The translations under genes and the position numbers were made by a program. Below, piece by piece: positions 8,896 through 62,170 of a stretch of DNA of 64,000 bases. Every line of letters starts with the position of its first letter. The stretch's first letter is position 1. The notes beneath the pieces were generated by a model, which was given only the letters and a program-made list of their open reading frames with translations, was not told the DNA's origin and did not search any database. The stretch spans positions 1-64,000 of the IMG/VR virus record IMGVR_UViG_3300033997_000478; one strand, given 5' to 3'.

Positions 8896-8938
8896 GCATA
8901 TCGCCCAGCTCCTGTTAAGGGAGCTGGGCTTTATGTCG
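8896..8938. terminator. GC hairpin flanked by GCATA ... TTATGTCG
   Basis: Stem GCCCAGCTCC/GGAGCTGGGC directly after the stop at 8887. Confidence 0.7.
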
Positions 8939-9007
8939 TCAAGTCGTCAATCTTTACACCGGGGTCTGATAGCTTGAACCATCCCCAACCACCAAGGAGT
9001 CATCTGA

Positions 9008-9427
9008 ATGGCATCTCTCAGCCGCCACGAAGTCAAAGAGCTGATCGCGAAGTTCAAGGAAAAGCACTTCCCCAAGTACAAGCCGGGGACCCAGTTGGTC
9101 GATCACATCGGTAACGGCGATACGCTGTACCCCGAGATCGGTCCACTGGAACACGAGCTGGACCACACCACCGGCCCGCTGGGTCCGTGTGTCAAGAACC
9201 GGGCGCGCATCCTCAAGCACTTCATCGAGATGCCGGCCGGGCCCGAGGTGTTGCAGATGTTCAACTTCGCCATGCATCGTGTCCGCTACGAAGGCGATGC
9301 CACGCGCGTGATCAAGCGCTTGCGCATCGACTGGACTGCGCACAAGAAGCAGCAGGACGAGCAGCTCAAGAAGCTGCCGAAGGTGATGGCCGAGATCAAC
9401 GAGGCCGAACGCCGCCTGTCGGCCTGA
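9008..9427 (+). CDS. Hypothetical protein, 139 aa
   Basis: AAGGAG RBS; biased codons; followed by a hairpin. Confidence 0.8.
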   Translation: MASLSRHEVKELIAKFKEKHFPKYKPGTQLVDHIGNGDTLYPEIGPLEHELDHTTGPLGPCVKNRARILKHFIEMPAGPEVLQMFNFAMHRVRYEGDATRVIKRLRIDWTAHKKQQDEQLKKLPKVMAEINEAERRLSA

Positions 9428-9476
9428 ACCACGGGCGGGAGGGCAACCTCCCGCTCTTATGCTCGCAAGGAATGAC

Positions 9477-9935
9477 ATGATTATCTCGGAACAACGGGAA
9501 GATCTGTTTCGGTGCCGTATGCAATGCCTGATATGTAGTGTTAATACGATCGGCGCCATGGGCAAGGGCATTGCAGTGGAGTTCCGCAATCGCGTACCGG
9601 GTCTCTACCGTTTCTACCAAGGCATCTACAACGACATCCCGCCCAACTACCACAAGATCCATCGTCTGGAAGTGTTTGACGTGGATGACAAGCGTAAGGT
9701 GTTGTTGTTTCCCACCAAAGACAACTGGCGCTTTCCGTCCAAGCTGCCAATGATCGATGCGAACCTGCGACAGCTCGCAGAACGCTACGAAGAATTCGGC
9801 ATCACCTCCATCGGCCTGCCCCTGATCGGGTGTGGGCACAACACCGGTCAGCTCAACTGGGAACAGCAGGTTCGTCCATTGGTTTATCAGCACTTGGACC
9901 CACTTCCCATTCCAGTCAAGATCTGCATCGGATAA
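9477..9935 (+). CDS. Macrodomain protein of the DarG/TARG1/Poa1p-like class (ADP-ribosyl hydrolase)
   Basis: Motifs VNTIGAMGKGIAVEF, LFPTKDNW, SIGLPLIGCG...LNW; AAGGA RBS 6 nt before ATG 9477. Confidence 0.85.
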   Translation: MIISEQREDLFRCRMQCLICSVNTIGAMGKGIAVEFRNRVPGLYRFYQGIYNDIPPNYHKIHRLEVFDVDDKRKVLLFPTKDNWRFPSKLPMIDANLRQLAERYEEFGITSIGLPLIGCGHNTGQLNWEQQVRPLVYQHLDPLPIPVKICIG

Positions 9936-9948
9936 CAAGGATTCAGCA

Positions 9949-12664: not shown

Positions 12665-12684
12665 ATAAACGCATTACAACCCTG

Positions 12685-12840: not shown

Positions 12841-13338
12841 ATGTCCACCGCAACCGAAACCAAGAAGACCACCAAGGCCGCCGCCGAAGACAACCCCCAC
12901 GGCATCTCCGACACCGTGCTGTCGCTGGCCAAGCTGATGCAGCAGAGCGGCGAACTGAAGGACGGCAAGTTCGAGCTGAACGCCGACTTCGTCAAGGACA
13001 ACCTGCCGCCGGACGTCAGCGAAGCCAGCTTCAAGCGCCACTCCCAGGTCCGTGCCGAACTCATCGCCGCCGGCGCCCTCGCGCTGTCCAACGTGGCCGG
13101 CCAGGACTTCAAGAAGCACAAAGACCACGACACCGCCTCGCTGCGCTTCAAGCTGGGCCGTGACACCGTCGACATCGACTACGACCGCGTGCGCGAGTTC
13201 AACGATGGCAAGGGCGGCAAGGTCAAGAAGCTGGGCCACGTGTCGGTGGGCTTCACCGCGGCCGGCGCCACGCCGACCGGCGACCTGGGCAAGGTCCGCA
13301 AGCACTCCAACGACGAAGCCACCCGCCTGTTCGGTTGA
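12841..13338 (+). CDS. Probably highly expressed hypothetical protein, 165 aa, Lys-rich
   Basis: Extreme C/G-ending codon bias; own upstream TACTAT element and downstream hairpin. Confidence 0.85.
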   Translation: MSTATETKKTTKAAAEDNPHGISDTVLSLAKLMQQSGELKDGKFELNADFVKDNLPPDVSEASFKRHSQVRAELIAAGALALSNVAGQDFKKHKDHDTASLRFKLGRDTVDIDYDRVREFNDGKGGKVKKLGHVSVGFTAAGATPTGDLGKVRKHSNDEATRLFG

Positions 13339-13368: not shown

Positions 13369-13409
13369 CATACGGCAGAGGCCCATTCGTGGGCCTCTGC
13401 TGGTTATGC
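13369..13409. terminator. Hairpin flanked by CATA ... TTATGC
   Basis: Stem GCAGAGGCCCA-TTCG-TGGGCCTCTGC. Confidence 0.7.
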
Positions 13410-15618: not shown

Positions 15619-15975
15619 ATGTCAAGTAAAATCATCGCCATCGTCGAAGGCCAGCAGAACGCCAGCGTCCTGCCCAACCTGATCGTCATTCATGGCCATG
15701 TCGACTTCAAGGCACAAGGTGGCAATGAAAAGCCCTTCACTGCCTTGCTCCAGAACGACCAAGCGTGGAAGCTGCAGGATGTCACGCAGGGCTGGAATGA
15801 GGTTACCCCGCAGGTCCTGGAGTGGTTGAACTCTGAAGATCAGATGGTCAGGGTTCTTCTGGGCATCCATCCCGATGCGGCCATCACCTCTGCCAACCTC
15901 CACCTCACCCGTCTCATCATGTCCACGGGCATGACCTACCCCATCCAACGCCGCAAAGAGAAAACCAATGACTGA
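15619..15975 (+). CDS. Hypothetical protein
   Basis: GAGGA RBS; coupled to the next gene. Confidence 0.75.
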   Translation: MSSKIIAIVEGQQNASVLPNLIVIHGHVDFKAQGGNEKPFTALLQNDQAWKLQDVTQGWNEVTPQVLEWLNSEDQMVRVLLGIHPDAAITSANLHLTRLIMSTGMTYPIQRRKEKTND

Positions 15976-16372
15976 CATTACTGCAGGCTGCGCATCCAAC
16001 GTCTTCGCCGTCAACGACATCGAACGCTTCACCCAGCGCATGGCCGAACATCAGCCGGAAGTGGTGATCACTCCCCACTCGCCCAACGAAGCCGGTGTCC
16101 CGATGGTGAAGCTGCACACCGACTATGGTAACTGGCCGGAAGTGGATGAGATGGGCGAGACCCATGCGAACTTCTACCAGATCCTGATCGATCACACCAA
16201 CGATGGTGAAGTTGTGTTGAGCACGGTCAGCATCATGGGGCCGGGTAATATCCACTTCGAGTCCACCCTCGTTCGGCGTGAGGAACTGCTGCCGGGTCTT
16301 TACGAACCGGTGCTGTGCAGCATCCGTCTGGCCGACATCGAACGCCTGCAGGATTTCATCAGCTACCTGTAA
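15968..16372 (+). CDS. Hypothetical protein
   Basis: Overlapping start; followed by a UUCG hairpin. Confidence 0.78.
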   Translation: MTDITAGCASNVFAVNDIERFTQRMAEHQPEVVITPHSPNEAGVPMVKLHTDYGNWPEVDEMGETHANFYQILIDHTNDGEVVLSTVSIMGPGNIHFESTLVRREELLPGLYEPVLCSIRLADIERLQDFISYL

Positions 16373-16380: not shown

Positions 16381-16411
16381 CCCCCTGCCTTCGGGCAGGG
16401 GGTTTATGTCG
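16381..16411 (+). terminator. UUCG hairpin followed by TTTATGTCG
   Basis: CCCCCTGCC-TTCG-GGCAGGGGG just after the stop at 16372. Confidence 0.75.
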
Positions 16412-16599
16412 GCTTCTTTCTTTTTTGGTTTCGGCGGCATAAAACCCCGCCCTCTTGCGAGGGCGGGGCGAGGTCCCCAAGGGTAGCGAATCCTTGGATC
16501 GGGTTGCCGTCGGTTGGGGGAGAGCGGTCCCGCGACGGCGCCAGATGCTTTCAACGAGAGATGTCAGCAGATGTCGATGCGCTTCTTACATACCATAGG

Positions 16600-16632
16600 G
16601 CATAAAGCGGGAGGTTTCCCTCCCGCCTATGC
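16600..16632 (-). terminator. Hairpin downstream of the tail tube gene, flanked by GCATAA ... CTATGC
   Basis: GCGGGAGG-TTTC-CCTCCCGC (GAAA loop on the minus strand). Confidence 0.7.
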
Positions 16633-16647: not shown

Positions 16648-17529
16648 TTACGGACGCGGAACGGTGTTGCCGCTGGTGGCGACGCGACGCGCCTGCTCCA
16701 TGTAGCCGTTCGGCACATCGGCCACGTACGGGTCGATGCGGCTGGTGAAGGCGTTCTGGGTCAGGTACGGGTTCATGCCGGTCATGACCATCGCGCTCAG
16801 ACGCTCCTGCGCGAAGTCGATGACACGCTGGCCGACCTGGGTCAGGGCGGTGAACTCGACGTTGTAGTCGAGCGACTCGCCTGCCTGGGTCAGATCACGG
16901 CGACCGGTGGTCTCGGCGATCTGGTTGTTCGGCCGCATGTTGGTGCACAGCCATGCTTCCTGGACCTTGGTGAAGGTCGGATCCGGCTCGAAGAAGAGCA
17001 CGGTCATGGCGGTGTAGTCGGGCAGCAGGTCGTTCGGACGGCGGCCGGAGGCGATGATGCCAGGTGCCTTGGTGATGGGATCCATCATCAGCATCTGGAC
17101 CCAGCCGTTCAGGAAGGCCTTGATCGGCTTGCCGTACTTTTCGGTCCAGGTGAAGGCCGGCACCGAACGGGTGCGGGTCACGTTGGACAGGTCCTGCTGC
17201 ATTTCGCCAGCGCCACCCACAGCGTTCTCGACGTGCTCGACGTTCAGGGTCGAGTTGAGGCCGTCGATGGACTTCGGGTGGACCTCGACCAGGGCCTTCA
17301 GAGTCTGTTCCCAGATCTCCGGATTGTCCAGGTCGCGGAAGCCGCGCGGAGCGGCGATCAGCAGGGCGATGATGTTCCGACGCACGTAGGCCGCGTTGTT
17401 CACGTAGGCCGCGAAGTCGGTCATGATGCCCATCTGGCCGCCGATGGCCGGATTCAGCATCGGAGCCTGGGTCTGCTTGCCGAAGGCGTTGCTACCCAGG
17501 ATCGTGCCTTGGATGCGAGTGTTGCTCAT
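16648..17529 (-). CDS. Tail tube protein (phiKZ gp30-like)
   Basis: 293 aa, directly downstream of the sheath gene; strong codon bias; size and position as in phiKZ-like phages. Confidence 0.8.
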   Translation of the reverse strand: MSNTRIQGTILGSNAFGKQTQAPMLNPAIGGQMGIMTDFAAYVNNAAYVRRNIIALLIAAPRGFRDLDNPEIWEQTLKALVEVHPKSIDGLNSTLNVEHVENAVGGAGEMQQDLSNVTRTRSVPAFTWTEKYGKPIKAFLNGWVQMLMMDPITKAPGIIASGRRPNDLLPDYTAMTVLFFEPDPTFTKVQEAWLCTNMRPNNQIAETTGRRDLTQAGESLDYNVEFTALTQVGQRVIDFAQERLSAMVMTGMNPYLTQNAFTSRIDPYVADVPNGYMEQARRVATSGNTVPRP

Positions 17530-17574: not shown

Positions 17575-19686
17575 TTACTGGGCCAGCACCAGATCAGCCG
17601 TGTCATGGGCCACGACGGAGTACGTGCCGACGGTACGCATCTGTTCACCGTACATGTGGATGTCGGTCTTCCAGCTGTACCCACGCTGCTCGTCGGCGAC
17701 GGTGAAGTAGGTATCCGGCTTGATGGTCACACGGCCGTCGTACTTACCTTCGGTGCGGCTGGTGATCAGCTCGTTCGACTTGGCGATGAACTGACCCTGG
17801 GTCAGCTTGCCACTCGAACCGGTCAGATCGGCCCAGGCGCGCTGCGCAACCTTCCACAGGTCCACCGCGATGGCGACGTTGAAGAAGTTGTTCAGGATCG
17901 AGGTGTCGTCGTCGTAGACGGTCTGCAGGCCGGGCCAGAACTGGCTCAGCATGTCGTAGTCCTGCGCCCAGACCAAGCCATTGCGCCAGTCATTCAGACG
18001 GGCGTTGGCGCCCTTGTCGGTGATGTTGACGTTCTTGAACTTGCTGATCTGGTTGTTCGGCGACTCGTCGAAGGCGGCGTTCGAATTCCAGATGCCGGTG
18101 CCGGCGCCCATGTAGGCGGCGCACTTGGCAGCGAACTCGATGGTCAGCGGCAGCTGGTTGTTCTGCGGACCGCGGTACTTGGAGTTCAGCAGCTGGCCGG
18201 AGTGACCCACGACCACCGCACGGCAGACCTTGGTACCGAAGATTTCCGACTCCGGATACAGGCGAGCGGCGTTCTTCAGGTTGATGGCCATGGACGATTC
18301 CTTGGCGCCATCGTTCTGCGGCTGGCTGATGTCCTGGGTGGACAGCACCGAGATCACGTCCTTGCGCACGCCGATCGGCCGGAGGAAGGCCAGCTTGGTG
18401 TCCAGGGTGAAGCCGGAGTCGTAGTAGAACGACACCGGGTACTTGGCCCAGTTCTCCATCTTCGCTTCCAGCTGGCCGTAGTTGGTCAGCTCGTTGCGCA
18501 CCGCGCTGTCGAAGGCGGTGAAGGACTGGGTACCGTCAGCACCACCCACAGCCCACTGCGCCGAAGCGTCGGACAGCAGGATGCCACCCTGGGCCGGACC
18601 CAGCAGCTCGTAGCTGTAGTACGGGGTGCCGTACTGGTCGGTTGCGCCCAGCAGGTTCACCATGTACAGGTACTGCGAATTGGCGTCCATGGTCAGTTCC
18701 GGCAGCAGACCCGCCGGGGCTTCCTTGGCGCCGATCATGGCCAGCACTTCCTTGATGTTGTCCTCGTAGATGTGGACATCACCGAAGGCGCCGTACACCG
18801 GGCTCATGCCCGAGGACGGGTCGGCCGCCTCGTAGGCGTCCTTGAAGGTGCGGGCCAGGTAGATCTCGGAATCGTTGCTGGTGTCGATCGCATCGGGCTT
18901 CAGCGAGAAGTCCAGCGTCGGGCTGCCCAGCAGGGTGTTGATGACGTTGGTCGTCGAATCCGGGTCGTTGCGCTTGACCAGCTGCAGGCGGTAGATGTAC
19001 GACTTGGTCTGGGAGACCAGGTTGTCGTTGATCGGGTTGCCCGACTGGGTGGTCGGCACGCTGAAGCGGGTGCCCTTGTTGTTGCCGGCATTGCCGAACC
19101 AACGGGCCGGCAGTTCGATCAGCGGGATCACCTGCGACTGCACGTCGGTGCTGGAGGTCAGACCACCAGCCTTCTTGCTGACCAGGCCGAACTCCTCGAC
19201 GGTGTTGCCCAGGGTCCAGTCGTTCAGGACCAGACGGGCACGGTGGCCGGGGATCTTGGCGCCGGAGCCGGTCACCGGGATCTTGGCACCGCTTTCGTCG
19301 CGCTTGAAGGTCTTGTCGTCGTTACGCTCGTACTGCTGCACGTCGTCAGCAACGATGTCCAGCGACAGCAGCAAGCGGGCTTCCTTACCGTCGGCCGGAC
19401 GAATGCGCTGCGCCATGATGGCGTTGCCTGCGCCCATGATCTGGGAGGCCAGCTCCGAGGCATGGTTGTAATACGGGGAACGGGTGTCCAGCGTCTTGGC
19501 GCCGTACAGGGTGGAGAAGGCGGCACCGGAAGCCAGGTGCGGCAGGGTGGGGCCGTCTTCGGCGTACAGGTACACGTGCGCCAGGTGGGTCGGCAGCGCC
19601 AGCGGTTCACGCACAGGAGCATTTCCGGAGTCGTCCAGAATACCCTGCATGTGAATGGCCGGAGCAGCGCTGAGGATGTTGCTCAT
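17575..19686 (-). CDS. Contractile tail sheath protein (phiKZ gp29-like)
   Basis: About 703 aa from ATG 19686 with an AGGAG RBS; N-terminal IHMQGILDDSG...PTHLAHVYLYA; YDSGFTLDTK motif; transcribed divergently from the gp28-gp25-like block. Confidence 0.85.
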   Translation of the reverse strand: MSNILSAAPAIHMQGILDDSGNAPVREPLALPTHLAHVYLYAEDGPTLPHLASGAAFSTLYGAKTLDTRSPYYNHASELASQIMGAGNAIMAQRIRPADGKEARLLLSLDIVADDVQQYERNDDKTFKRDESGAKIPVTGSGAKIPGHRARLVLNDWTLGNTVEEFGLVSKKAGGLTSSTDVQSQVIPLIELPARWFGNAGNNKGTRFSVPTTQSGNPINDNLVSQTKSYIYRLQLVKRNDPDSTTNVINTLLGSPTLDFSLKPDAIDTSNDSEIYLARTFKDAYEAADPSSGMSPVYGAFGDVHIYEDNIKEVLAMIGAKEAPAGLLPELTMDANSQYLYMVNLLGATDQYGTPYYSYELLGPAQGGILLSDASAQWAVGGADGTQSFTAFDSAVRNELTNYGQLEAKMENWAKYPVSFYYDSGFTLDTKLAFLRPIGVRKDVISVLSTQDISQPQNDGAKESSMAINLKNAARLYPESEIFGTKVCRAVVVGHSGQLLNSKYRGPQNNQLPLTIEFAAKCAAYMGAGTGIWNSNAAFDESPNNQISKFKNVNITDKGANARLNDWRNGLVWAQDYDMLSQFWPGLQTVYDDDTSILNNFFNVAIAVDLWKVAQRAWADLTGSSGKLTQGQFIAKSNELITSRTEGKYDGRVTIKPDTYFTVADEQRGYSWKTDIHMYGEQMRTVGTYSVVAHDTADLVLAQ

Positions 19687-19899
19687 GGTTGGAAGCTCCT
19701 GAAAACTGGGACCAGTTTTTGCTTGCGGCAACGAAATCTCGGGACGCGACTCCGAAATTAAACGTGGTTGACACAGGCAGTGCTGACTAATGCTATAGCA
19801 ATGGAGTGATGTCGCGCATCATAGTAATAAATAACTCACACATCATCTATCTCCGATGCGCAACCTTTTGACCCAAACAACCTCCGCTGGAGTGGCAAG

Positions 19900-27572: not shown

Positions 27573-27610
27573 CGGCATAAGCCCCCTCCCAAACGGGAGG
27601 GGGCGTTATG
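27573..27610. terminator. Bidirectional hairpin between convergent genes, CGGCATAA ... TTATG
   Basis: GCCCCCTCCC-AAAC-GGGAGGGGGC between stops at 27572 (+) and 27616 (-). Confidence 0.8.
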
Positions 27611-27615: not shown

Positions 27616-27975
27616 TCAGCCGATCTTGCGGTGGTCGGCCATGGCCTGACGCTTTTGCTGGATGACCACATCCAGCAGCTTCATGACCGTCATGTCGCGG
27701 GCGCGATTGAAGTCATCGTCGGGCAACACCACGCTGACGCGAATGGGTTCGCCGGTCAGGGTTTCGGCCGTACCGTCCATGGCCCACACACGATTGACTT
27801 CTTGGGCAACCCAGGGGAAGACGAAGTCGCGACGCAGCACGATCTTTCGACCACCCACCATGACCTTACGCAGGTGGCCCTTCAGGCGCGCCGCTTCGAT
27901 CGGGGTGAACTGGATGTACTCGGAGAAACCGGTGCTCACCGAGGACGGACCCCGGAGCCATTTGGGAAGTTTCAT
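27616..27975 (-). CDS. Hypothetical protein, about 119 aa
   Basis: ATG 27975 overlaps the stop of the upstream gene by 4 nt. Confidence 0.72.
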   Translation of the reverse strand: MKLPKWLRGPSSVSTGFSEYIQFTPIEAARLKGHLRKVMVGGRKIVLRRDFVFPWVAQEVNRVWAMDGTAETLTGEPIRVSVVLPDDDFNRARDMTVMKLLDVVIQQKRQAMADHRKIG

Positions 27976-28373
27976 AGTTCTCGTTGGTTTGTCAGATGCA
28001 CGCCAGGCACCCGGTCCAAGAACGCACGCATCACGTACGCCTGCGGATAGCGGGTGTGGCGCAGCAGAGGGTTGCACAGCATCGGGAAAGTGATGCGCTC
28101 AAAGAACCGTGGATCGATGTACGGTTTCTCTGCCTCCGAGGCAAAGGCCTTGACTTCGAACAACACAAACAGTCGGTCGGGAATCCACCATCGGACAAAG
28201 CGGGTCCTGTAGGTGCGCTGGCGAATTTCCAAGCCCAGCTCGATTTCCTTTTTGTCGGTATCAGTGCGGTAGGTTACCGTGGGGTAGAGCACCTTTTCGA
28301 AGGTCTCCTCGGTCCGTCGTTCCCCCAGCAGGTTATCCCACAGCAGACCCAGTTGCAAGAGCAGCCATTGCAT
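27972..28373 (-). CDS. Hypothetical protein, 133 aa
   Basis: Co-oriented and coupled with its neighbours. Confidence 0.7.
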   Translation of the reverse strand: MQWLLLQLGLLWDNLLGERRTEETFEKVLYPTVTYRTDTDKKEIELGLEIRQRTYRTRFVRWWIPDRLFVLFEVKAFASEAEKPYIDPRFFERITFPMLCNPLLRHTRYPQAYVMRAFLDRVPGVHLTNQREL

Positions 28374-30289: not shown

Positions 30290-30702
30290 TGTTTTCCACG
30301 AGGAGAGCTCCAGGAGGATCGAAAGAGTAGGCTACACAATTACACCGATCCTCTGAGCATATCCTCTAGAGTCTGCTGTAAGATTTCAGTGAAGCCCTTG
30401 TTCACAGGCCCATTTCTGGGCCTTCACAGGCTTACGTAATTCTTAACGTAAGTGACTGTATCTCGTAGTAGATATTTAACAGTAGTACCTACGGTACTAC
30501 TATACTACTTGTTATATTTGCTTCTATTGGGACTACTAGAAAAATTTGGGACCAAGCCCAGGCCCGTAGGGCTGGGCGTTAAGGTCCAAAAAAGAAATTT
30601 CGTTTAGGACGCGAGGGCCCCAAGCCCTCGCTTATGACGTTGAGTAGAAAAGCACACAAGCTCCTATGTCTATGTAACCTATCCCTCTTAGAGATCCTTC
30701 AC

Positions 30703-31180: not shown

Positions 31181-31217
31181 CGGCATACGGCCCCACCTTC
31201 GGGTGGGGTCTTTATGC
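31181..31217. terminator. UUCG hairpin flanked by CGGCATA ... TTTATGC
   Basis: GGCCCCACC-TTCG-GGTGGGGTC. Confidence 0.75.
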
Positions 31218-34652: not shown

Positions 34653-34744
34653 CGGCATAGCCCCTCCTCCCGATCGGGAGGAGGGGCGGATAGGGTGCTT
34701 TTCTTTTTCGCTATTTTGTGGATACCAACACAGAGGAAACATCC

Positions 34745-35131: not shown

Positions 35132-35168
35132 CGGCATAGCCCCTCCCCATTTGGGGAGGGGCCTTATG
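35132..35168. terminator. Bidirectional hairpin, CGGCATAG ... TTATG
   Basis: GCCCCTCCCC-ATTT-GGGGAGGGGC between convergent stops. Confidence 0.78.
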
Positions 35169-37607: not shown

Positions 37608-37651
37608 CCGACAACGCCCCCTCCCTTCGGGGAGGGGGTTATGGAACCCCC

Positions 37652-38747: not shown

Positions 38748-38901
38748 CATACGGCCCGGCCTCGCCGGGCTTTATGCCGCTAAAAGCCCCTCAGACGCGT
38801 TCTGAGGCCCGTACGTTATTTGCCACACCGTTCCGTAATCTAGTGTATGGAAAGGCCGCCAAGGCGCGCCTGTTGGCCTTCCCTTCAAAGAGACATTTTC
38901 C

Positions 38902-43322: not shown

Positions 43323-43360
43323 GGGAGGTCCCGTTTGGGGCCTCCCTTCTTTTTATGCCG
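43323..43360 (+). terminator. Hairpin followed by a U-tract and TTATGCCG
   Basis: GGGAGGTCCC-GTTT-GGGGCCTCCC-TTCTTTTTATGCCG. Confidence 0.75.
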
Positions 43361-45652: not shown

Positions 45653-45700
45653 ACGGCATAAGCCCCCTAGCACTCCTCACGGGGCGCTAGGGGGTGGTGC
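45653..45700. terminator. Hairpin between convergent genes, preceded by CGGCATAA
   Basis: CCCCCTAGC...GCTAGGGGG. Confidence 0.72.
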
Positions 45701-45701: not shown

Positions 45702-46790
45702 TTACAGGTACGGCTTGATGCCGCGGTCGATCAACATCATGATCTCATCAAAGGTCTGCGCAGACAGCGCGTTGCGCAAAGCGCCGTTACCTTCGATGTA
45801 TTGCAGATGTCGACGGATGTAGTTCAGGTACTGGTAGTTGCGTTGGTTGTCGGTGTTCCGGTTGAACTGGACCAAGAAGGCAATCAGCATTACACGAGCC
45901 AACAACACTGCCCAGGAGATCTGGGTAGAGTAGGCCTGTTCCGGCAACCGTAGTGTCTCGTGTAAATCTTCAGAGGAAACCGTAGGAATGTGAGACACCA
46001 ACGTGTCAAAGTCCCACCGCTTGGAACTGGCCAGCATCAGCCAGCGTTCCAACAGGCTGTCCACCTCTTTATCCCAGTTGGTGACGAAGAAGGTGTGGTG
46101 ACGTTCAGTATCGCGGGGTGATTCAATCCCGAAGTACAGATTCGTCAGGCGGTTGAGGATGGCGATGTCAGCGTAGGAGTCGAGCATGTTGGGCAGCGGG
46201 TACGCTTGCAGGAACTGACCAACCGTTCGTGGGGATTCGTCCACCACGCTGTTGGCCCGGCGCCACGCACGGTACTGACTGGCCAGCATGGGGATATTGA
46301 TCGAGATGACAGCAATGCCACTTTCAGTTGACGCGAACTGATCGTCGGCCACTGGCATATTAAGGGATGTCATCGGATGGTACAGGTAGCGAATGGGACT
46401 TAGCTCCTCCCATCGCTCCAGTCCCGCCTTGACGTCCCATTGATCGGTATCGGCAATGATGACTTCTTGTACCTTATTGCCCAAGAAAGGTCCAGGACGC
46501 CAGAGTTGTCCACGAGAGAGAGCCGAGGTCATCTTCAGGCTCTGCGTGAACAGAAGTGCGACGTCGGAAATCTTGTCGTTGAAGACCTGATCGGTAGGTC
46601 CATTCGAATAGGGAATCGAACCCATCAGCCGCAACAGCAGATGGCCACCCGTGATGTTGCGGGGATTCTCCCGACGGTACTTCTTGACACGTTCCACCGT
46701 CAGGCGCAGTCCATCACGGACACGCCTGAACTCAGGAAAGGTCATGCCGCCTCCAAAGTTCAGAGGCGACTGGTTCAGCAGTTGGTACAT
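45702..46790 (-). CDS. Conserved jumbo-phage protein (gp52-like by position)
   Basis: 362 aa between the DNA polymerase and chimallin genes, on the opposite strand. Confidence 0.62.
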   Translation of the reverse strand: MYQLLNQSPLNFGGGMTFPEFRRVRDGLRLTVERVKKYRRENPRNITGGHLLLRLMGSIPYSNGPTDQVFNDKISDVALLFTQSLKMTSALSRGQLWRPGPFLGNKVQEVIIADTDQWDVKAGLERWEELSPIRYLYHPMTSLNMPVADDQFASTESGIAVISINIPMLASQYRAWRRANSVVDESPRTVGQFLQAYPLPNMLDSYADIAILNRLTNLYFGIESPRDTERHHTFFVTNWDKEVDSLLERWLMLASSKRWDFDTLVSHIPTVSSEDLHETLRLPEQAYSTQISWAVLLARVMLIAFLVQFNRNTDNQRNYQYLNYIRRHLQYIEGNGALRNALSAQTFDEIMMLIDRGIKPYL

Positions 46791-47090: not shown

Positions 47091-49019
47091 ATGGCCACCA
47101 ACACCCCGAACGACAACAACAACGAAACCGGCACCACCAGCGCAGAAGCCATCTTCAACCGCAACTCCGGCAACACCGCCGGTGCCCAGAACGCCGGTGG
47201 CAGCCAGAGCGGCGGCTTCAACCGCAATGCCGGCCGCGCTGCCCGTCCGGGCCTGACCGCTCGCCTGAGCGGCGCACGTGGCGTGGTCTCGCGCCGCCGT
47301 CCGGGTGCCGAACTGGAAGTCATGCGCAAGGCCTTCGAAGAGGCCCTGAGCCAGTTCCACACCTCCGGCCGCCTGCAGGGCGGTGAGAACCTGAAGCTGA
47401 TGCTGATCGATCGCCAGGAACTGGACCGCAAGGTCGAGCTGCTGGTTGCCTACATCCCGATGACCGTCGACAACCAGCTGCACGTGTCGATCTACACCGT
47501 GATCCTGGCCGACCAGAGCGAGAACCTGGACAGCATCAAGTTCCAGGGCACCGGCGGCCGCAACTTCGCCTACACCGTGACCGCAGGCGACGCCTGGGAT
47601 CGCAACCTGTGGGTGAAGGTCGCAGCGATCGTGCAGGAAAACATGGGCGCTGTCGCCATCCAGCACAACGCCGGCGCGCAGGTCATCCCGGCCGAAACCG
47701 ACGTCACCGACAAGGGCCTGATCCACGGCCTGGCGTTCTTCGTCTCCGAAGGCCTGACCCGCACCATCACCGACAAGATCCTGAAGTCCACCGATGACGT
47801 GATCTCGGTCGCCGACATCGGCGACGACGAAATCGTCGAAGGCAAGCTGGTCTACAGCACCCTGCCGCTGACCACCGCCGCCGGCCTGCCGCTGCGTGGT
47901 GACATCCAGGCCAAGCTGAGCTACAGCCAGCGCGGCAACGAGGGTGACCAGCGTGAACGTGCCTTCAGCCTGGACAACAGCCGTCCGCTGGCCGGCGCCG
48001 CCGGCTTCATCGACCTGGGCTGGGAAGACCCGCAGCAGCCGGCCTTCGGCCAGCAGCCGGCCACCCAGCGCTACCGTGCACGCTTCGTCATGACCCGCCT
48101 GGACACCGAAGGTGACTGGATCACCCCGGAACTGCAGCTGCTGTCGCTGGCCGGCGCCACCCTGGTGGCACGTCAGATGGCCTGGGCTCGCATCTGGTCG
48201 CAGGAGTTCCGTACCAAGGAACACGACATCGGCGTGATCGGCTACGAGCTGGCTCCGGGTGGCGAAGCTGAGCGCATCAACACCTCGGCCGCAGCCTTCA
48301 CCAACGAAGCGCTGTACCAGCTGGTGTCGGCGACCATCTACCCGGACATCCTGTTCCAGCTGGACATCGAAGAAGTCGGCGAGCTGTCGTTCCAGAACCG
48401 CGTGCTGCTCGACGCTGCCAACAACAACGCCGATGCGCAGGACGCCGTGATCGCGGCCGCCAACAACCTGACCAACAACGAGTTCACCCGTCTGTGGCAG
48501 GCCGGCACCCCGTTCGTCATGAACGATGGCAACCGCATCCACCTGGGCTACTACGAAGCCAACGACGGTCAGCGTCGTGACATCCGTGACCTGGACTACC
48601 TGTTCATGCTGGAGCGCTTCGGCGCGCAGGATCCGAAGATGGTCGAGCGCTGGCAGGCGACCTTCGACGACGTCGAACGCGACGAAGTCGAGCGTGTGGC
48701 TGAGCGTGAAGACATGATCCGCAAGATCCTGGGCCCGACGGTGACCATCACCGGCTACGCTCGTCGCGTGACCTTCCACCCGCAGGCCCTGGACGTCCTG
48801 CTGGCCGCTTGCGGCGCAGCCGGCCTGACCATCCGTCAGGACTCGCAGTCCTACGGCTTCACCGGTTCGGCCGCTCGCGGTCGTGCTTCGGGCGGTGCCT
48901 TCGCCTTCGGCGGCGGCGCTACGAACAACCTGTTCAGCTCGGGCGTCACCGGCAGCCGTGGTCGCGGCTTCGGCTCCACCTTCACCGGTGGTTCGACCTG
49001 GCGTGGTCGCGGTAACTGA
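47091..49019 (+). CDS. chmA: Chimallin, phage nuclear shell protein (phiKZ gp54 / 201phi2-1 gp105-like)
   Basis: 642 aa, among the strongest codon bias in the window, disordered N- and C-tails, directly upstream of the nvRNAP beta' gene; followed by a strong terminator. Called from size, synteny and family resemblance. Confidence 0.85.
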   Translation: MATNTPNDNNNETGTTSAEAIFNRNSGNTAGAQNAGGSQSGGFNRNAGRAARPGLTARLSGARGVVSRRRPGAELEVMRKAFEEALSQFHTSGRLQGGENLKLMLIDRQELDRKVELLVAYIPMTVDNQLHVSIYTVILADQSENLDSIKFQGTGGRNFAYTVTAGDAWDRNLWVKVAAIVQENMGAVAIQHNAGAQVIPAETDVTDKGLIHGLAFFVSEGLTRTITDKILKSTDDVISVADIGDDEIVEGKLVYSTLPLTTAAGLPLRGDIQAKLSYSQRGNEGDQRERAFSLDNSRPLAGAAGFIDLGWEDPQQPAFGQQPATQRYRARFVMTRLDTEGDWITPELQLLSLAGATLVARQMAWARIWSQEFRTKEHDIGVIGYELAPGGEAERINTSAAAFTNEALYQLVSATIYPDILFQLDIEEVGELSFQNRVLLDAANNNADAQDAVIAAANNLTNNEFTRLWQAGTPFVMNDGNRIHLGYYEANDGQRRDIRDLDYLFMLERFGAQDPKMVERWQATFDDVERDEVERVAEREDMIRKILGPTVTITGYARRVTFHPQALDVLLAACGAAGLTIRQDSQSYGFTGSAARGRASGGAFAFGGGATNNLFSSGVTGSRGRGFGSTFTGGSTWRGRGN

Positions 49020-49060: not shown

Positions 49061-49097
49061 AGAGAGAGCCACCCTTCGGGGTGGCTCTCTTTTTTTG
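49061..49097 (+). terminator. Canonical intrinsic terminator after chmA
   Basis: AGAGAGCCACCC-TTCG-GGGTGGCTCTCT followed by a T-run. Confidence 0.9.
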
Positions 49098-49306
49098 CCG
49101 TTAAGACGTAATTTGCAACACAATAGAGAGATCTATTGAGCACTGTCTTTTGGGTGGCAGTGTGAAAACGACAAACCGAAAACCCAAGCAGAAACGAGGG
49201 CTGTGTCATAGACACTCAACTACCAGATGTTGGTGAAAACCCATATCGTGCTGTCCCACGCATCCCCGTAGGACTGGGGCGTAAGTTCGATGGTATCGGT
49301 ATCGGG

Positions 49307-50743
49307 TTGGTGGATTTCGATGCGCTGTTTGAGCAGGCAACGACTCCCCCGGTGATTCTCAACACATTCAACGTCGATACGGTGGATGACAAGACGTTGC
49401 TGGACTCGATGGTGTACACTTACTACGACGGCGATTCGCTGAACGTGGTACCGATGTGTGAATGCCAGCGCACCACTGGTGCCGGCATGATCAATCAGCG
49501 ATGTAGCTTCTGCGGTACGACCGTTCTCCCGCTGAGCGAGCGTCCGCTGGAATCGCTGCTGTGGATGGAACCTCCGGCAGGTGTGGAGACGTTCATCAAT
49601 CCGCAGGTGTGGACCATGCTGTCCAAGGCCATGACCCATGGTGGGATCAATGGTCTGTTGTGGTTGGTGGATCCTCTGGCCATCGTAGGGCCGGAACCGC
49701 ACAAGGAAATTCGACGCCTGATGGATCTGGGCATCGATCGCGGCATCAATCACTTCTACAAGAACTTCGACCAGATCATCGAGCTGCTGTTCAATACGCA
49801 GGTGATCGCCGGTGGCAACCGCCATCAGCGTGAAGAGCTGTGGCAGTTCATCCAGTGCAATCGGCACAAGATCTTCGCCAAGCGACTGCCGGTCCCCTCG
49901 CGTATGGGCTTTGTGGCCGAGCGTACCGTCACCGGTACGTTTGCAGATAAGACCATGAAGCCGATGCTCGATGCGATCCGCACGATCTCCTCGGCAGTGC
50001 ATTCGCAGACGCCACTGGACATCCGCAAGCTCCAGTCGCGCACGATGCTGGCCAATGACCTGGTGGCAACCTACTCCCAGGACTTCATGGCCGCAACGCT
50101 GACCTCCAAGCGGGGTTGGCTGCGTAAGCACGTGTACGGCAATCCGCTGTTCTTCACCTTCCGTGGTGTGATCAGCTCGATGTCCGAGCGCCACGAGTAC
50201 GACGAACTGCACGTGCCGTGGGGCATCTGCATGTCGACCTACTCCAAGCACTTGGAGAACAAGCTCTACAAGACGGCGATCAATGAGCGTGGACGTCCGT
50301 TCACTCCCAACGAAGCTATCGGGCTCATCGAAAGCCATACCCTGCGGTACCACCCGGTCCTCCACAGCTTGTTCAATGAGCTGATCGAGGAATCCCCGCA
50401 CAAGGGCCTGCCGGTGCTGTTCAACCGCAACCCGTCGCTGGACCGTGGTTCGATCCAGGAGTTCTTCATTACCAAGGTGATCGAAGACCCCGAGATCAAC
50501 GCCATCGCAATGTCGGTTCTGTGCCTGAAGGCGCCGAATGCTGACTTCGACGGCGATGCCCTCAACGGCATGGCGATTCTGGACAACCGTTCTGAACGCC
50601 ACTTCGCTGCACTGGCCCCGCACTTCGGTGCACTGGACCTGGATCATCCGCGCCGGATGTCCAACAACCAGGCTTTCCCGCCTCCGGTTGCTGGCGCCAT
50701 CGCGAACATGGTTCATCGCAGCGATCGTACTGTGGTACAATGA
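49307..50743 (+). CDS. Non-virion RNA polymerase beta'-like catalytic subunit (phiKZ gp55-56.1-like); start uncertain
   Basis: Zn finger CEC...CSFC; FNRNPSL; catalytic APNADFDGD; uninterrupted. Confidence 0.93.
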   Translation: MVDFDALFEQATTPPVILNTFNVDTVDDKTLLDSMVYTYYDGDSLNVVPMCECQRTTGAGMINQRCSFCGTTVLPLSERPLESLLWMEPPAGVETFINPQVWTMLSKAMTHGGINGLLWLVDPLAIVGPEPHKEIRRLMDLGIDRGINHFYKNFDQIIELLFNTQVIAGGNRHQREELWQFIQCNRHKIFAKRLPVPSRMGFVAERTVTGTFADKTMKPMLDAIRTISSAVHSQTPLDIRKLQSRTMLANDLVATYSQDFMAATLTSKRGWLRKHVYGNPLFFTFRGVISSMSERHEYDELHVPWGICMSTYSKHLENKLYKTAINERGRPFTPNEAIGLIESHTLRYHPVLHSLFNELIEESPHKGLPVLFNRNPSLDRGSIQEFFITKVIEDPEINAIAMSVLCLKAPNADFDGDALNGMAILDNRSERHFAALAPHFGALDLDHPRRMSNNQAFPPPVAGAIANMVHRSDRTVVQ

Positions 50744-50803
50744 CCGGCATAAGGGGAGGAGCTTCGGCTCCTCCTTCTTGTGCTCTACCCTGGAGAGTGT
50801 TCA

Positions 50804-52722: not shown

Positions 52723-52785
52723 GCATAACAGGGGCCCTTCGGGGCCCCTGCATTCAGCTTTCTTTTTTCTTTGCATGGGCCCATC

Positions 52786-59384: not shown

Positions 59385-59390
59385 TAGCCC

Positions 59391-60863
59391 ATGAAAATTG
59401 TCAAAGTTCTGTTCATGGAAATTGGCGCAAATGACCAGATGTATCTGCGCCCGTTTCAGGCAAACGTGGATGGCGAGGAACTGAACCACCTGCAGGAAGT
59501 CACCCGCAACGGCAAGAACCTGACACCGGCCGCGCTCAGTGGCGTGGGTGCTGACATCATGCGTCCTTCGGCCACGATCTCCAATCCGGTGGACGTGGTG
59601 GGCGGTCTGAACAACGGCCGTCTGGTGTTCATGATGGAAGTGGAATGGCCGGCGCAAGCGGGTCTGGTCACGGTGGAGTACCTCACCGGTTACACCGACT
59701 ACGTCGGCGTCAACGCCACCTTCGGTCGCAACACCTACGACCCGAACATGCGGCTGTACTTCAACAACGTGATCCGCGGTAGCCGTCGTCGCGATCGCAG
59801 CGGCTTTGCTTCCCGCTCCACGGTGCACGTGCAGGATTCCCACCAGATCATCTCCGGTGAGTACCAGCCGGACATCACCAACCTGCACAACGTCCCGCAC
59901 CTGATGCGCCCGCAGGACGTGTTCACCAACGTCTCCATGGCCGAATGCCGGAACCTGATCTCCGGCGACGTCTACGACACCCGCTCCACCCACGGCCCGG
60001 ACAAGCTGCAGGTCAGCGACCGTCGCAACAACATCCCCGGCACCTACCTGTCGCGCCTGCTGACCACGTGGAACGATCACAGCGATCGTGATCACCACGA
60101 CGAGGCGACCATGTACAGCTCGATGGCCTCGGTGGTTGCAGAACCGTCGATCATCAAGCTGCGCACGATCTCCAAGCTGTCCACCATGACCGACCTGCGT
60201 CGCGGTGGTTCGGTCACCTGGGGCGAGCTGAAGGAAGCCGATGAAGTGGGCATGCTCGAAGCCCGCACCACGGCGGCACTGGCGCTCTCCAATGCCACCC
60301 GCAGTCAGCTCAGCCATGTCGGCCAGGGTCAGCACTGGCGCGGTAATGATCACCACACGATCATCGCCACCAGCGTCGCCCAAGCAGTTCCGGGCATCAT
60401 GGCGCAGCTGCTGTTGACCATGGCGCAGTTCACGGCCACCAACATGACCTTGGACGGCAGCTGGATCGTCAACATGATCGACTGGGAGTCCTTCAACGAC
60501 GACCAGGACATGGTGATCGAGCAGGTCAAGCTGTTCCAGCAGCGCATGATCACTGATCTGCTGTTGGGTGTTTCGGCAGGCAACCTGATGCCGATGGCCC
60601 TGACCTGCACGTTCGATGTCATGTCCCAGACCAGCATCGAAGTGGACTTCGACGGCGAAGCTGTACCGTTCTTCGCCCCGAGCTTCTGCGACGGCCTGTT
60701 CTCCAACATCCGCGCACCCGGCACCAACGCTTTGGACGATCTGGCTACCAACATCCAGAAGCTGATGCTCTCCATGCATCAGGACAACTCGGCCAAGCAC
60801 ACCGCCTACGAACCAATCGAAATGGGAAATTTCCGTAATGATCAAGCCAACCACTCTCTTTGA
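59391..60863 (+). CDS. picA: Probable PicA/Imp1 nuclear import factor (phiKZ gp69-like)
   Basis: 490 aa directly after the gp68-like gene; YLRPFQAN, YLTGYTDY and MRLYFNNV motifs; assignment rests largely on synteny. Confidence 0.65.
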   Translation: MKIVKVLFMEIGANDQMYLRPFQANVDGEELNHLQEVTRNGKNLTPAALSGVGADIMRPSATISNPVDVVGGLNNGRLVFMMEVEWPAQAGLVTVEYLTGYTDYVGVNATFGRNTYDPNMRLYFNNVIRGSRRRDRSGFASRSTVHVQDSHQIISGEYQPDITNLHNVPHLMRPQDVFTNVSMAECRNLISGDVYDTRSTHGPDKLQVSDRRNNIPGTYLSRLLTTWNDHSDRDHHDEATMYSSMASVVAEPSIIKLRTISKLSTMTDLRRGGSVTWGELKEADEVGMLEARTTAALALSNATRSQLSHVGQGQHWRGNDHHTIIATSVAQAVPGIMAQLLLTMAQFTATNMTLDGSWIVNMIDWESFNDDQDMVIEQVKLFQQRMITDLLLGVSAGNLMPMALTCTFDVMSQTSIEVDFDGEAVPFFAPSFCDGLFSNIRAPGTNALDDLATNIQKLMLSMHQDNSAKHTAYEPIEMGNFRNDQANHSL

Positions 60864-62133
60864 AATGGTTCTGAACTCGGCCGGTGCCGACCACGACGAA
60901 AACGGTCTGGTCAGCATGCGCATGATCGATGAAGAACCGATGCCGTGGAAGATCGGCGGCAAGCGACTGGCCATCCCGTACAAGGAGCTGCTCCGTGAGG
61001 GCGCCTTCAACGAAGATGGTCAGCTGATCGCCTTCCAGCCGTTCAGCGAGAACGTCGTGCTGGACACGTCCCCGGTGCTGGAGTCGTTGAACAACGCCTT
61101 CCTGCATCGCCTGACCACCGTCACCAAGGAGCTGGTCATCCAGCTCTCGGCGGTGGCTGCGGACAAGGACAAGCACCCGAAGATGAAGATGAATGCCCAG
61201 AAGGTGCTCTCGGCCATGCCGGACGCCGACGAGACCATGGCCAAGTCCTTCGCCAAGATCATGCAGGCATCTTCCACCGTCGGCAAGAACCAGCTGCTGT
61301 CGCTGTTCGTGCGCTCCTCCGGCACCTACGGCGGCGAGAAGGTGCATCGCCTGGGCAAGTTCTTCCCGCGCGTGGCCGGTGAGCTCGACGATGGCAACCA
61401 CGAGATCTTCGGCGTAACCCTGCGCAAGAAGAAGGACGTGCCGATGTTCAAGGCACTGCTGGAGTACCTGTTCCCCGGCTACGAGGATCCGGACACCTAC
61501 TCGGCCCCGTCCAACTCGCCGGTGGCACCGACCTTCCACGCGCTGCTCAAGTGCTTTGCCAAGGTGGCTGCTCAGCTGAACAAGATCGTGGACATCCACG
61601 CTCGTCACCTGAACAACCCCGACAGCCTGCGCATCGACATCGACTGGCGGGAAGCGGTGGAAAGCCTGGAACCGTACCGCGACCTGCTCCCGGTACTGCC
61701 GGGCAACGACGGCAAGGAAGGCATCAAGACCCAGCGCGTGCGCGCTGAGAAGAGTACGGCCGCGGCCAACACCGCAGCAGCTGCAGCGCCGGCACCGGTC
61801 CGCAAGGAAGGCGGCGTGAGCGTGACTGACTTCCTCGGCGGCATCCGTCAATCCACTCAGCCGGCAGCGGCCAGTGGTTGGGGACAGCCCGCCAATGCGG
61901 GGGGTCTTCAACCCATGGGTTTCCGCGCTCAACAGCAGGAGCTGATCCGTCGCCAGCGTGAGCTGGAGCAGTTGCCCGATTGGGCTCGTCCGGAGCAGGA
62001 TAATTCCCGCTTCCAGTCCAACACCGGCAGTGGCTGGGGTCGGGACAACGGCACCATCTCTCGGGGTGGTGGGCGAGTCTTCGGTGGTGGCGGTAGCAGC
62101 CGTGGCGGTTGGGGTGGCGGTTCTTCCCTGTAA
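60838..62133 (+). CDS. Conserved protein (gp70-like) with a Gly/Arg-rich disordered C-tail
   Basis: Overlaps the end of the picA-like gene; strong codon bias. Confidence 0.7.
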   Translation: MIKPTTLFEMVLNSAGADHDENGLVSMRMIDEEPMPWKIGGKRLAIPYKELLREGAFNEDGQLIAFQPFSENVVLDTSPVLESLNNAFLHRLTTVTKELVIQLSAVAADKDKHPKMKMNAQKVLSAMPDADETMAKSFAKIMQASSTVGKNQLLSLFVRSSGTYGGEKVHRLGKFFPRVAGELDDGNHEIFGVTLRKKKDVPMFKALLEYLFPGYEDPDTYSAPSNSPVAPTFHALLKCFAKVAAQLNKIVDIHARHLNNPDSLRIDIDWREAVESLEPYRDLLPVLPGNDGKEGIKTQRVRAEKSTAAANTAAAAAPAPVRKEGGVSVTDFLGGIRQSTQPAAASGWGQPANAGGLQPMGFRAQQQELIRRQRELEQLPDWARPEQDNSRFQSNTGSGWGRDNGTISRGGGRVFGGGGSSRGGWGGGSSL

Positions 62134-62135
62134 GG

Positions 62136-62170
62136 CGGCATAAGCGCCAGGCCCCTCCGGGGGCCTGGCA
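62136..62170. terminator. Hairpin between convergent genes, preceded by CGGCATAA
   Basis: GCCAGGCCCC-TCC-GGGGGCCTGGC. Confidence 0.72.

What the first reader, a model, noticed from the sequence alone, without database searches (positions are those of the whole stretch)
8896..62170. Recurrent intergenic module: GC hairpin flanked by (CGG)CATA and/or TTATG(C/T)CG instead of a U-tract
Seen at about 8896, 9435, 13369, 16381, 16435, 16600, 27573, 30611, 31181, 34653, 35132, 37615, 38748, 43323, 45653, 50745, 52723 and 62136. Stems differ in sequence but the flanks are conserved, and the two flanks are reverse complements. Between convergent genes (27.6, 35.1 kb) both flanks are present. At 34653, 50745 and 52723 only the minus-oriented flank is clear, although both neighbours are plus-strand genes. 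Established, as I recall: TATG is the phiKZ nvRNAP late-promoter core. Inference: either a sequence-specific terminator for the phage RNAPs (hairpin plus UUAUG), or a combined terminator and re-initiation cassette. At 9457 the TATG is followed within ~16 nt by an RBS and ATG, and at 37640 by an ATG 11-12 nt later. Similar flanks may exist in other phiKZ-like genomes, so novelty lies in the mechanism.
Basis: partly seen in the sequence, partly recalled or inferred. Interest (0 to 1): 0.62.

Follow-up and report, generated by a model that had tools for sequence, protein, structure and literature searches.

The report
phiKZ-type terminators with a TTATG box
The recurring GC hairpins flanked by CATAA and TTATG are this jumbo phage's transcription terminators, of a type already mapped by RNA sequencing in phages phiKZ and 201phi2-1, so the pattern is real but mostly known, and only the reason for the TTATG box remains open.

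Summary
All 18 listed sites are stable GC hairpins carrying at least one box. Genome-wide (324 kb), TATG lies within 12 nt of 98 of 210 hairpin flanks against 4.7 expected.

The window comes from a nucleus-forming, phiKZ-like jumbo phage. It encodes chimallin, PhuZ and split RNA polymerases, and its nearest relative is Xanthomonas phage RTH11.

The module matches the terminator motif published for phiKZ: a stem-loop followed by YTTATKYYGT. Here the consensus is stem-yTTATGCyGy. All eight 201phi2-1 RNA 3' ends printed in the literature fall 1-2 nt after the G of that box, about 8 nt past the stem. The box therefore occupies the position of the U-tract.

The placement fits a terminator:
- Modules sit a median 13 nt after stop codons, but at variable distance from the next start.
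- UUCG loops lie on the sense strand.
- 18 of 23 convergent gene junctions carry the box on both strands.
- Syntenic RTH11 modules keep the box while the stems change.

The CATAA flank is the same box on the other strand, and it can also lengthen the stem. Re-initiation from the TATG is not excluded, but it is disfavoured. No RNA data exist for this phage.

Verdict: a new member of a known kind. The mechanism of the box is still open.

The parts
8903..8938 (+). Terminator module after + gene 8564-8887. Hairpin 8903-8929, box TTTATG at 8930-8935. The upstream CATA (8897-8900) is a weak minus-strand copy.
   Evidence: dG -22.7; syntenic RTH11 module has a different stem and the same box
9435..9461 (+). 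Terminator module after + gene 9008-9427. Hairpin 9435-9454, box TCTTATG. The macro-domain gene starts at 9477.
13369..13408 (+). Terminator module after + gene 12841-13338. Hairpin 13375-13400 with a UUCG loop, box TGGTTATG, and a weak mirrored CATA at 13369-13372.
16381..16408 (+). Terminator of + gene 15968-16372 at a convergent junction. Hairpin 16381-16402, box TTTATG.
16435..16468 (-). Second (tandem) terminator of - gene 16648-17529. Hairpin 16445-16468, minus-strand box TTTTATGCCG (16435-16444).
16601..16631 (.). First terminator of - gene 16648-17529, with boxes on both strands. Hairpin 16607-16626.
   Evidence: z -5.2; stem-loop identical in RTH11
27573..27610 (.). Two-way terminator between terminase (+, ends 27572) and - gene 27616-28077. 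Hairpin 27581-27604, boxes on both strands. It fills the 43-nt gap between the genes.
   Evidence: z -6.4 and -4.8
30611..30636 (+). Hairpin 30611-30631 plus TTATG in a long divergent intergenic region just ahead of gene 30634-31179. Probably a 5'-leader or small-RNA terminator.
   Evidence: the loop is inverted in relatives' contigs
31184..31216 (.). Terminator after + gene 30634-31179. Hairpin 31191-31208 (UUCG loop), boxes on both strands. It is followed by a promoter-like CTATAATAC at 31254.
34656..34687 (-). Hairpin 34660-34687 carrying only the minus-strand box (CGGCATA on +), between two + genes. It is a near-duplicate of the left half of the module at 35135-35168.
   Evidence: RTH11 has no counterpart of gene 34718-35131
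35135..35168 (.). Two-way terminator between + gene 34718-35131 and - gene 35173-35973. Hairpin 35139-35162.
37617..37643 (+). Terminator after the PhuZ tubulin gene 36624-37607. Hairpin 37617-37638 (UUCG loop), box TTATG. The small ORF 37652-37846 starts 9 nt after the G.
38748..38779 (.). Terminator after + gene 38325-38747. Hairpin 38754-38770, box TTTATGCCG, and a mirrored CATACG.
43323..43360 (+). Imperfect-stem hairpin 43323-43346 followed by TTCTTTTTATGCCG, ahead of the DNA polymerase gene.
   Evidence: (the tail is identical in RTH11 and the stem differs)
45654..45695 (-). Terminator of - gene 45702-46790 at the convergent junction with the DNA polymerase gene. Imperfect hairpin about 45662-45695, minus-strand box TTATGCCGTCA.
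49064..49101 (+). Hairpin after the chimallin gene 47091-49019, followed by a T7 run and then GCCGT. It is the only module in the window with a classical U-tract.
50745..50782 (.). Module after RNA polymerase subunit gene 49307-50743. Hairpin 50755-50774 (UUCG loop on +), perfect minus-strand box, variant TTGTGC on +.
52724..52750 (-). Hairpin 52729-52750 (UUCG loop on +) carrying only the minus-strand box, between + genes.
62136..62169 (-). Terminator at the convergent junction of + gene 60838-62133 and - gene 62184-62522. Hairpin 62146-62169, box on the minus strand only.

Best explanation
The modules are the factor-independent transcription terminators of a phiKZ-like (chimallivirus) jumbo phage. 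As the RNA is made, a GC-rich stem-loop forms, usually with a UUCG loop. The next 8 or so nucleotides, (y)UUAUGCyG, take the place of the usual U-tract. By analogy with the mapped ends in 201phi2-1, the RNA is released about 8 nt after the stem, 1-2 nt past the G.

The upstream (CGG)CATAA is the same box written on the other strand. One hairpin can therefore stop transcription from both directions, which is what convergent gene pairs need. In the sense RNA it can also pair with UUAUG and lengthen the stem.

Shown here: the anatomy, the statistics, the placement, the conservation across relatives, and the identity with the published motif.

Inferred: that RNA ends form at these sites in this phage, and which polymerase (virion, non-virion or host) reads them.
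For: Identity of the phage. PHROG matches to nuclear shell protein, RNA polymerase beta fragments, tail sheath, terminase and DNA polymerase. PhuZ tubulin. A gp123 homologue at genome 248060-249730. Synteny with RTH11.

The motif.
- An alignment of 108 strand-oriented flanks gives stem-yTTATGCyGy, with a spacing of 1-3 nt.
- PMC10914365 reports 61 phiKZ terminators, mapped by ONT-cappable-seq, with a stem-loop plus BYTTATKYYGT.
- The same module, including the mirrored CATAA, is visible in phiKZ, 201phi2-1, RTH11 and Klebsiella phage Eowyn.

The 3' ends. All 8 TTS coordinates printed in PMC11512511 lie 1-2 nt after the G of the box, the 8th nt after the stem.

Placement.
- The median distance from stop codon to stem is 13 nt, and 21 of 31 are within 21 nt. 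The distance from the box to the next start ranges from -12 to 486 nt.
- TTCG loops outnumber CGAA 34 to 2 between + genes, and the ratio is reversed between - genes.
- 21 of 23 convergent junctions hold a hairpin, and 18 carry the box on both strands, often filling gaps of 36-62 nt.

Selection. In 11 syntenic pairs with RTH11, 10 have different stem-loops. All stay stable and keep the box.

The two flanks are independent copies. Their spacers are not correlated and their variable positions do not covary.
Against: There are no RNA 5' or 3' end data for this phage. The only public runs that hold it are contigs, probably DNA, from related phages.

The tail here is less U-rich than in phiKZ or 201phi2-1: a mean of 3.9 U and 5.1 A+U in 8 nt. 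Simple hybrid weakness therefore explains it less well.

About a third of intergenic hairpins between co-directional genes show no box on the sense strand (29 of 77). Part of that may come from my crude gene calls, which cover about 85% of the genome.

A few modules between + genes carry only the minus-strand box (34660, 52729, 124923).

Mapped 3' ends in the literature cannot by themselves tell termination from processing.
Confidence: 0.85

Rival explanations
1. Combined terminator and re-initiation cassette. The TATG of the box is also a promoter core for the non-virion polymerase (start at G), so that transcription stops and restarts at the same place.
For: TATG with G as +1 is the phiKZ late-promoter core. 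[quoted passage not shown] This phage has a gp123 homologue in which all seven pocket positions are kept or conservatively replaced (F, R, H, K, H, W, F). At 9461 and 37643 a gene starts 9-17 nt after the G with no room for another promoter. Eight of 31 box-to-start distances lie between 22 and 39 nt.
Against: Boxes point into the opposing gene at 18 convergent junctions. Box-to-start distances are very variable. The box context, T-TATG-C-Y-G, differs from free TATGs and from P119L (TATGTAGA), which has no upstream hairpin. TTATGCYG hardly occurs without a hairpin: 5 of 44. A distinct CTATAATAC motif lies between module and gene at three sites. The G is T, A or C in 11 of 40 sense TTATN boxes, although G is essential in phiKZ promoters. 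Free TATG is not enriched upstream of genes (39 observed, 38 expected). The published 201phi2-1 sites are RNA 3' ends.
Confidence: 0.12
2. RNA processing or stability element. The 3' ends arise by nuclease cleavage at or after UUAUG followed by trimming back to a protective hairpin, rather than by polymerase release.
For: Mapped 3' ends cannot separate termination from processing. The hairpins are very stable and carry UUCG loops on the sense strand.
Against: The 201phi2-1 ends sit at a fixed register about 8 nt past the stem, which is the classical release distance rather than the stem base expected after trimming. Eight of them reduced downstream reporter expression in vivo (PMC11512511). 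The two-way arrangement at convergent genes fits polymerase traffic control.
Confidence: 0.05
3. DNA-level palindromic repeat, such as a REP-like or mobile element, or a binding site for a dimeric DNA-binding protein.
For: The module is symmetric, and five copies share the stem GCCCCCTCCC. One extra gene (34718-35131) sits between two near-duplicate half modules. Relatives differ in gene content there and show an inverted loop at 30611.
Against: Stems differ freely between sites and between relatives while pairing is kept. The spacing between the two boxes varies with stem length. The UUCG loop bias follows the sense strand, and the position follows stop codons. All of this points to the RNA.
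Confidence: 0.03

Closest known systems
Conserved phiKZ terminator motif (Putzeys et al. 2024, microLife, PMC10914365) and motif A, or A+B, of 201phi2-1 (PMC11512511)
   Same: A GC-rich stem-loop with a C-rich first arm and a tetraloop, followed at once by YTTATKYYGT. It lies in intergenic space after stop codons, is two-way at convergent genes, and occurs in a phage with phiKZ-type split RNA polymerases. The mirrored CATAA is also visible in phiKZ and 201phi2-1 DNA.
   Different: Here the genome is 58% GC, so the box is an AT-rich island followed by GCyG. The tail holds only about 4 U in 8 nt. G is preferred over T at the K position. No RNA mapping exists for this phage.
Classical bacterial intrinsic (Rho-independent) terminator
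   Same: A GC hairpin, with release expected 7-9 nt after the stem. An upstream complement of the tail makes it two-way, as A-tracts do in bacteria. The 201phi2-1 versions work in uninfected Pseudomonas.
   Different: There is no U-tract. The tail has a fixed order, T-T-A-T-G-C-Y-G, rather than a run of U. Only 27 of 108 tails have 5 or more T in 8, and standard scans miss most of them.
phiKZ non-virion polymerase late promoter (TATG, G = +1)
   Same: Shares the four bases TATG, and this phage keeps the gp123 pocket residues that read them.
   Different: It is always attached to a hairpin, it is anchored to stop codons rather than starts, and it has a different downstream context. The published equivalents are 3' ends, not 5' ends.

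Membership tests
phiKZ-type conserved terminator (stem-loop + TTAT box) | GC-rich stem-loop, mostly with a C-rich 5' arm, a G-rich 3' arm and a tetraloop | tested here: met
   105 intergenic perfect stems. The 5' arm is C-rich in 45 and G-rich in 16, and the loop is TTCG in 27. Fold z-scores are -2.5 to -6.4.
phiKZ-type conserved terminator (stem-loop + TTAT box) | Box YTTATKYYGT directly after the stem | tested here: met
   The consensus is yTTATGCyGy, 1-3 nt after the stem. TTATG is seen 74 times against 1.7 expected.
phiKZ-type conserved terminator (stem-loop + TTAT box) | Lies after gene ends in the sense direction, and is two-way at convergent genes | tested here: met
   The median stop-to-stem distance is 13 nt. 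UUCG lies on the sense strand. 18 of 23 convergent junctions have boxes on both strands.
phiKZ-type conserved terminator (stem-loop + TTAT box) | The host genome encodes phiKZ-type virion and non-virion multisubunit RNA polymerases | tested here: met
   PHROG RNA polymerase beta fragments. gp123 homologue, E 4e-79.
phiKZ-type conserved terminator (stem-loop + TTAT box) | RNA 3' ends pile up about 8 nt after the stem | not testable with these tools
   No raw RNA reads of an infection exist. In 201phi2-1, 8 of 8 printed TTS fit this register.
Classical intrinsic terminator | A U-tract (5 or more U within 8 nt after the stem) | tested here: not met
   27 of 108 boxed tails reach it, with a mean of 3.9 U. 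Only 3 of 77 sense flanks have a T-run without TTAT.
phiKZ late promoter | TATG placed at a working distance upstream of a gene, with no need for a hairpin, and G as the start site | tested here: inconclusive
   The core is present, but its placement follows stop codons, it faces opposing genes and its context differs. Start sites cannot be tested.
REP-like or mobile palindromic repeats | Near-identical repeated sequence that is independent of transcription direction | tested here: not met
   Stems differ between sites and relatives. Loop and position follow the sense strand.

The most novel reading that the evidence does not exclude
The TTATG box may not be merely a weak RNA:DNA hybrid. [quoted passage not shown] The polymerase would then be held at a fixed register while the hairpin forms. 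One protein-DNA contact would serve both to start and to stop transcription, and at a few tightly packed sites (9461, 37643) the same box might also restart it.

Pointers in that direction:
- The order T-A-T-G is kept even in a 58% GC genome where the rest of the tail is GC-rich.
- The release point in 201phi2-1 is fixed 1-2 nt after the G.
- All seven pocket positions are kept in this phage.
- There is a rough match across nine phages between an intact pocket and use of the box. That match is confounded by relatedness.

Against it: the 201phi2-1 terminators also work in uninfected cells, and the published structure describes the pocket as incomplete in the elongating enzyme.
Probability: 0.13. 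Interest if true: 0.75.

Novelty: new member of a known kind. Interest (0 to 1): 0.33.

Why it matters
It gives a ready map of transcription-unit ends for an unstudied, high-GC, nucleus-forming jumbo phage. It shows that the phiKZ terminator box is conserved from 37% to 58% GC genomes and in Klebsiella phage Eowyn, but is replaced by ordinary U-tracts, or is absent, in the SPN3US, PCH45 and Vibrio pir03 samples.

Here the box stands out against a GC-rich tail. This phage is therefore a good natural test of whether the box acts through hybrid weakness or through sequence-specific recognition by the phage polymerases. That question is open for the whole family.

The compact two-way modules of about 40 bp could also serve as insulators in phage engineering.

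Tried and rejected
RNA evidence. The look-up of sequencing runs gave no raw-read RNA run of an infection. Read laying showed only contigs of related phages, which cannot show RNA ends.

Supplementary tables of the two ONT-cappable-seq papers are not held. The 2014 phiKZ transcriptome paper is not held either.

Covariance model. Two MAFFT alignments of modules (A1, A2) put the stems in inconsistent registers. I therefore dropped the plan to build a model and used a direct hairpin-and-flank scan on fetched stretches of 11 phage genomes instead.

Stem-extension test. If the two flanks were selected to pair, their spacers and variable positions should covary. They do not. The invariant cores can still pair, so this role is neither shown nor excluded.

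Search for a TATG promoter class. Free TATG is not enriched upstream of genes. Gene-ward TATGs are seen in divergent regions, but that cannot be told from chance.

My first tblastn suggested the tail sheath lies on the + strand. GC3 and PHROGs show the real gene is 17575-19731 on the - strand.

The window protein 49307-50743 is not the gp123 homologue. The homologue lies outside the window.

The chance explanation is rejected.


Full report
WHAT THE WINDOW IS

The window is the first 64 kb of a single 324,428-bp contig with 58% GC. It encodes:
- a nuclear shell protein (47091-49019);
- RNA polymerase beta fragments (13-2898 and 49307-50743);
- a tail sheath (17575-19731, minus strand);
- terminase and DNA polymerase;
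- a PhuZ-type tubulin (36624-37607).

It is syntenic with Xanthomonas phage RTH11 at about 67% DNA identity. It is therefore a phiKZ-like, nucleus-forming jumbo phage that should transcribe its genes with its own virion and non-virion polymerases.

CHECK OF THE OBSERVATION

A scan for perfect GC-rich stems (7 bp or more, loop 3-9) finds 105 intergenic hairpins in the genome, 19 of them in the window.

- TATG lies within 12 nt of 98 of the 210 strand-oriented 3' flanks, against 4.7 expected. TTATG is seen 74 times against 1.7 expected.
- The 8-mer TTATGCYG occurs 10 times in the window, against 2.1 in shuffles.
- In the genome, 39 of its 44 copies directly follow a strong fold.
- Aligning 108 flanks on TATG gives the consensus stem-(y)TTATGC(C/T)G(y)(y), with 1-3 nt between stem and TATG.
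- T-runs are rare.

WHAT IS ALREADY KNOWN

ONT-cappable-seq of phiKZ mapped 133 termination sites. [quoted passage not shown]

The 201phi2-1 study found 132 sites. Its commonest motif 'strongly resembles' the phiKZ one. A second motif co-occurs with it and lengthens the hairpin. Fifteen sites are two-way. Eight terminators were validated in a reporter in uninfected P. chlororaphis (PMC11512511).

The consensus found here is the same motif. I fetched the eight 201phi2-1 sites whose coordinates are printed in that paper. All eight are a hairpin followed by (T)TTATG, and the mapped RNA end falls 1-2 nt after the G, the 8th nt after the stem. The box is thus the 3' tail of the finished RNA and stands exactly where a U-tract would.

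EVIDENCE FROM THIS GENOME

All of this rests on my own rough gene calls: 308 genes covering 85% of the genome.

- Between co-directional genes the modules sit a median 13 nt after the upstream stop codon, but from -12 to 486 nt before the next start.
- The loop reads TTCG on the sense strand 34 times and CGAA twice between plus-strand genes. The ratio is reversed between minus-strand genes. Selection therefore acts on the sense RNA.
- Of 23 convergent junctions, 21 hold a perfect-stem hairpin and 18 have the box on both strands. The module often fills a gap of only 36-62 nt, with the two stop codons abutting the boxes, as in TGA-CGGCATAA...TTATGCCG-TCA.
- In 11 syntenic pairs with RTH11, ten stem-loops differ, yet all stay stable and keep the box.

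THE UPSTREAM FLANK

The upstream flank carries the whole box, out to GCCGT, on the other strand. In 33 two-box modules the two spacers are not correlated, and the variable positions do not covary. They therefore look like two independent strand-specific copies.

The invariant cores CAUAA and UUAUG do pair in predicted folds, adding 4-8 bp to the stem. That agrees with the 201phi2-1 report that longer hairpins terminate better. Both roles may hold.

True minus-only modules between plus-strand genes are few: 34660, 52729 and 124923. Others carry the variants TTGTGC or TTATTCCGT on the sense side. The module at 34660 looks like a duplicated half of the module at 35139, bracketing a gene that RTH11 lacks.

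IS THE TATG ALSO A PROMOTER?

TATG with G as +1 is the phiKZ late-promoter core. It is bound on the non-template strand by gp123 (PMC4666361, PMC12809450). This phage has a gp123 homologue (248060-249730, E 4e-79) in which all seven pocket positions are kept or conservatively replaced. TATG recognition is therefore probably conserved.

The box itself is nevertheless unlikely to be a promoter as a rule:
- It faces opposing genes at convergent junctions.
- Its downstream context is C-Y-G, unlike free TATGs and unlike P119L, which has no hairpin.
- It hardly exists without a hairpin.
- Its G is sometimes T, A or C.
- A separate motif, TTTCA..CTATAATAC, lies between module and gene at three places.

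Two sites where a gene starts 9-17 nt after the G (9461 and 37643) keep the idea alive for special cases.

DISTRIBUTION

I sampled 40-50 kb from each phage and counted hairpin flanks with the box.

| Phage | Flanks with box |
|---|---|
| RTH11 | 18 of 48 |
| phiKZ | 14 of 34 |
| 201phi2-1 | 14 of 28 |
| Klebsiella phage Eowyn | 16 of 26 |
| Serratia phage Kodama | 6 of 16 |
| PCH45 | 2 of 24 |
| RSL2 | 2 of 10 |
| FLC4-4C | 1 of 18 |
| SPN3US | 0 of 42 |
| Vibrio phage pir03 | 0 of 10 |
| RSL1 (unrelated jumbo phage) | 0 of 36 |

PCH45 mostly uses T-runs instead. The four phages with a fully kept gp123 pocket (phiKZ, 201phi2-1, Eowyn and this phage) are heavy users of the box; RTH11's pocket was not examined. 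This is only a hint, because the phages are related and the alignments are at 23-30% identity.

LIMITS

No RNA end data exist for this phage. The published ends cannot by themselves exclude processing. It is unknown which polymerase reads the box.

VERDICT

It is a new member of a published kind of terminator. The open and interesting part is why the box is T-T-A-T-G rather than a U-tract, and whether that is linked to the TATG pocket of the phage polymerase.

Noticed in passing
window 2899-4234 (ORF 2961-3884; Rfam hit 3875-4179): The large RNA polymerase beta gene is contiguous in RTH11 (1440 aa). Here it seems to be split into 13-2898 and 4235-5350 by an insert holding an HNH/NUMOD homing endonuclease and a group I intron (RF00028, 74 bits).
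   Followed up: partly
window 31254; genome 86727, 156038, 212770, 214946, 237777: A promoter-like motif, (AAG)TTTCA..(G/A)CTATAATAC. All 6 TATAATA and all 9 TATAAT in the genome are intergenic, co-oriented with the next gene and 35-92 nt upstream of its start. Three of them lie just after a terminator module. This is possibly the early (virion polymerase) promoter class.
   Followed up: partly
window 30619-30623: Contigs of related phages in three public runs read the loop of the 30611 hairpin as its reverse complement (CCCAA to TTGGG) with the stem unchanged. That means the loop has flipped between the inverted arms. RTH11's syntenic hairpin also has TTGGG.
   Followed up: no
window 34656-35168: Gene 34718-35131 is bracketed by two near-duplicate half modules (ACGGCATAGCCCCTCC...) and has no counterpart in RTH11. 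Relatives' contigs show replaced segments here. Terminator hairpins may be hot spots for gene gain and loss.
   Followed up: partly
window 16409-16430; genome 144156, 202930, 214868, 263334, 308353 and others: In 11 of 98 boxed flanks a second element, a T-run such as CTTTCTTTTTTG, follows 7-16 nt after the TATG. All 11 are on the + strand, including at convergent junctions. Unexplained.
   Followed up: partly
window 49064-49101: The terminator after the chimallin gene is the only one in the window with a classical T7 run. It still ends in GCCGT, like the box.
   Followed up: no
genome-wide; Klebsiella phage Eowyn locus L020: The first arm of the stem is C-rich in 45 boxed hairpins and G-rich in 16 (p 3e-4), as in the phiKZ consensus. 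In phage Eowyn, most boxed hairpins in the sampled stretch have the G-rich arm first (GGGAGGGC gaaa GCCCTCCC).
   Followed up: no
window 30110-30636: The hairpin plus box at 30611 lies in a long AT-richer divergent region, just ahead of a gene rather than after one, and this is conserved in RTH11. It may end a small RNA or act as a leader terminator, as reported for phiKZ T102.
   Followed up: no
window 37652-37846 and 9477-9935: A 64-aa ORF with two CxxC pairs starts 9 nt after the box at 37643, and a macro-domain gene starts 16 nt after the box at 9461. My automatic gene calls missed both.
   Followed up: partly
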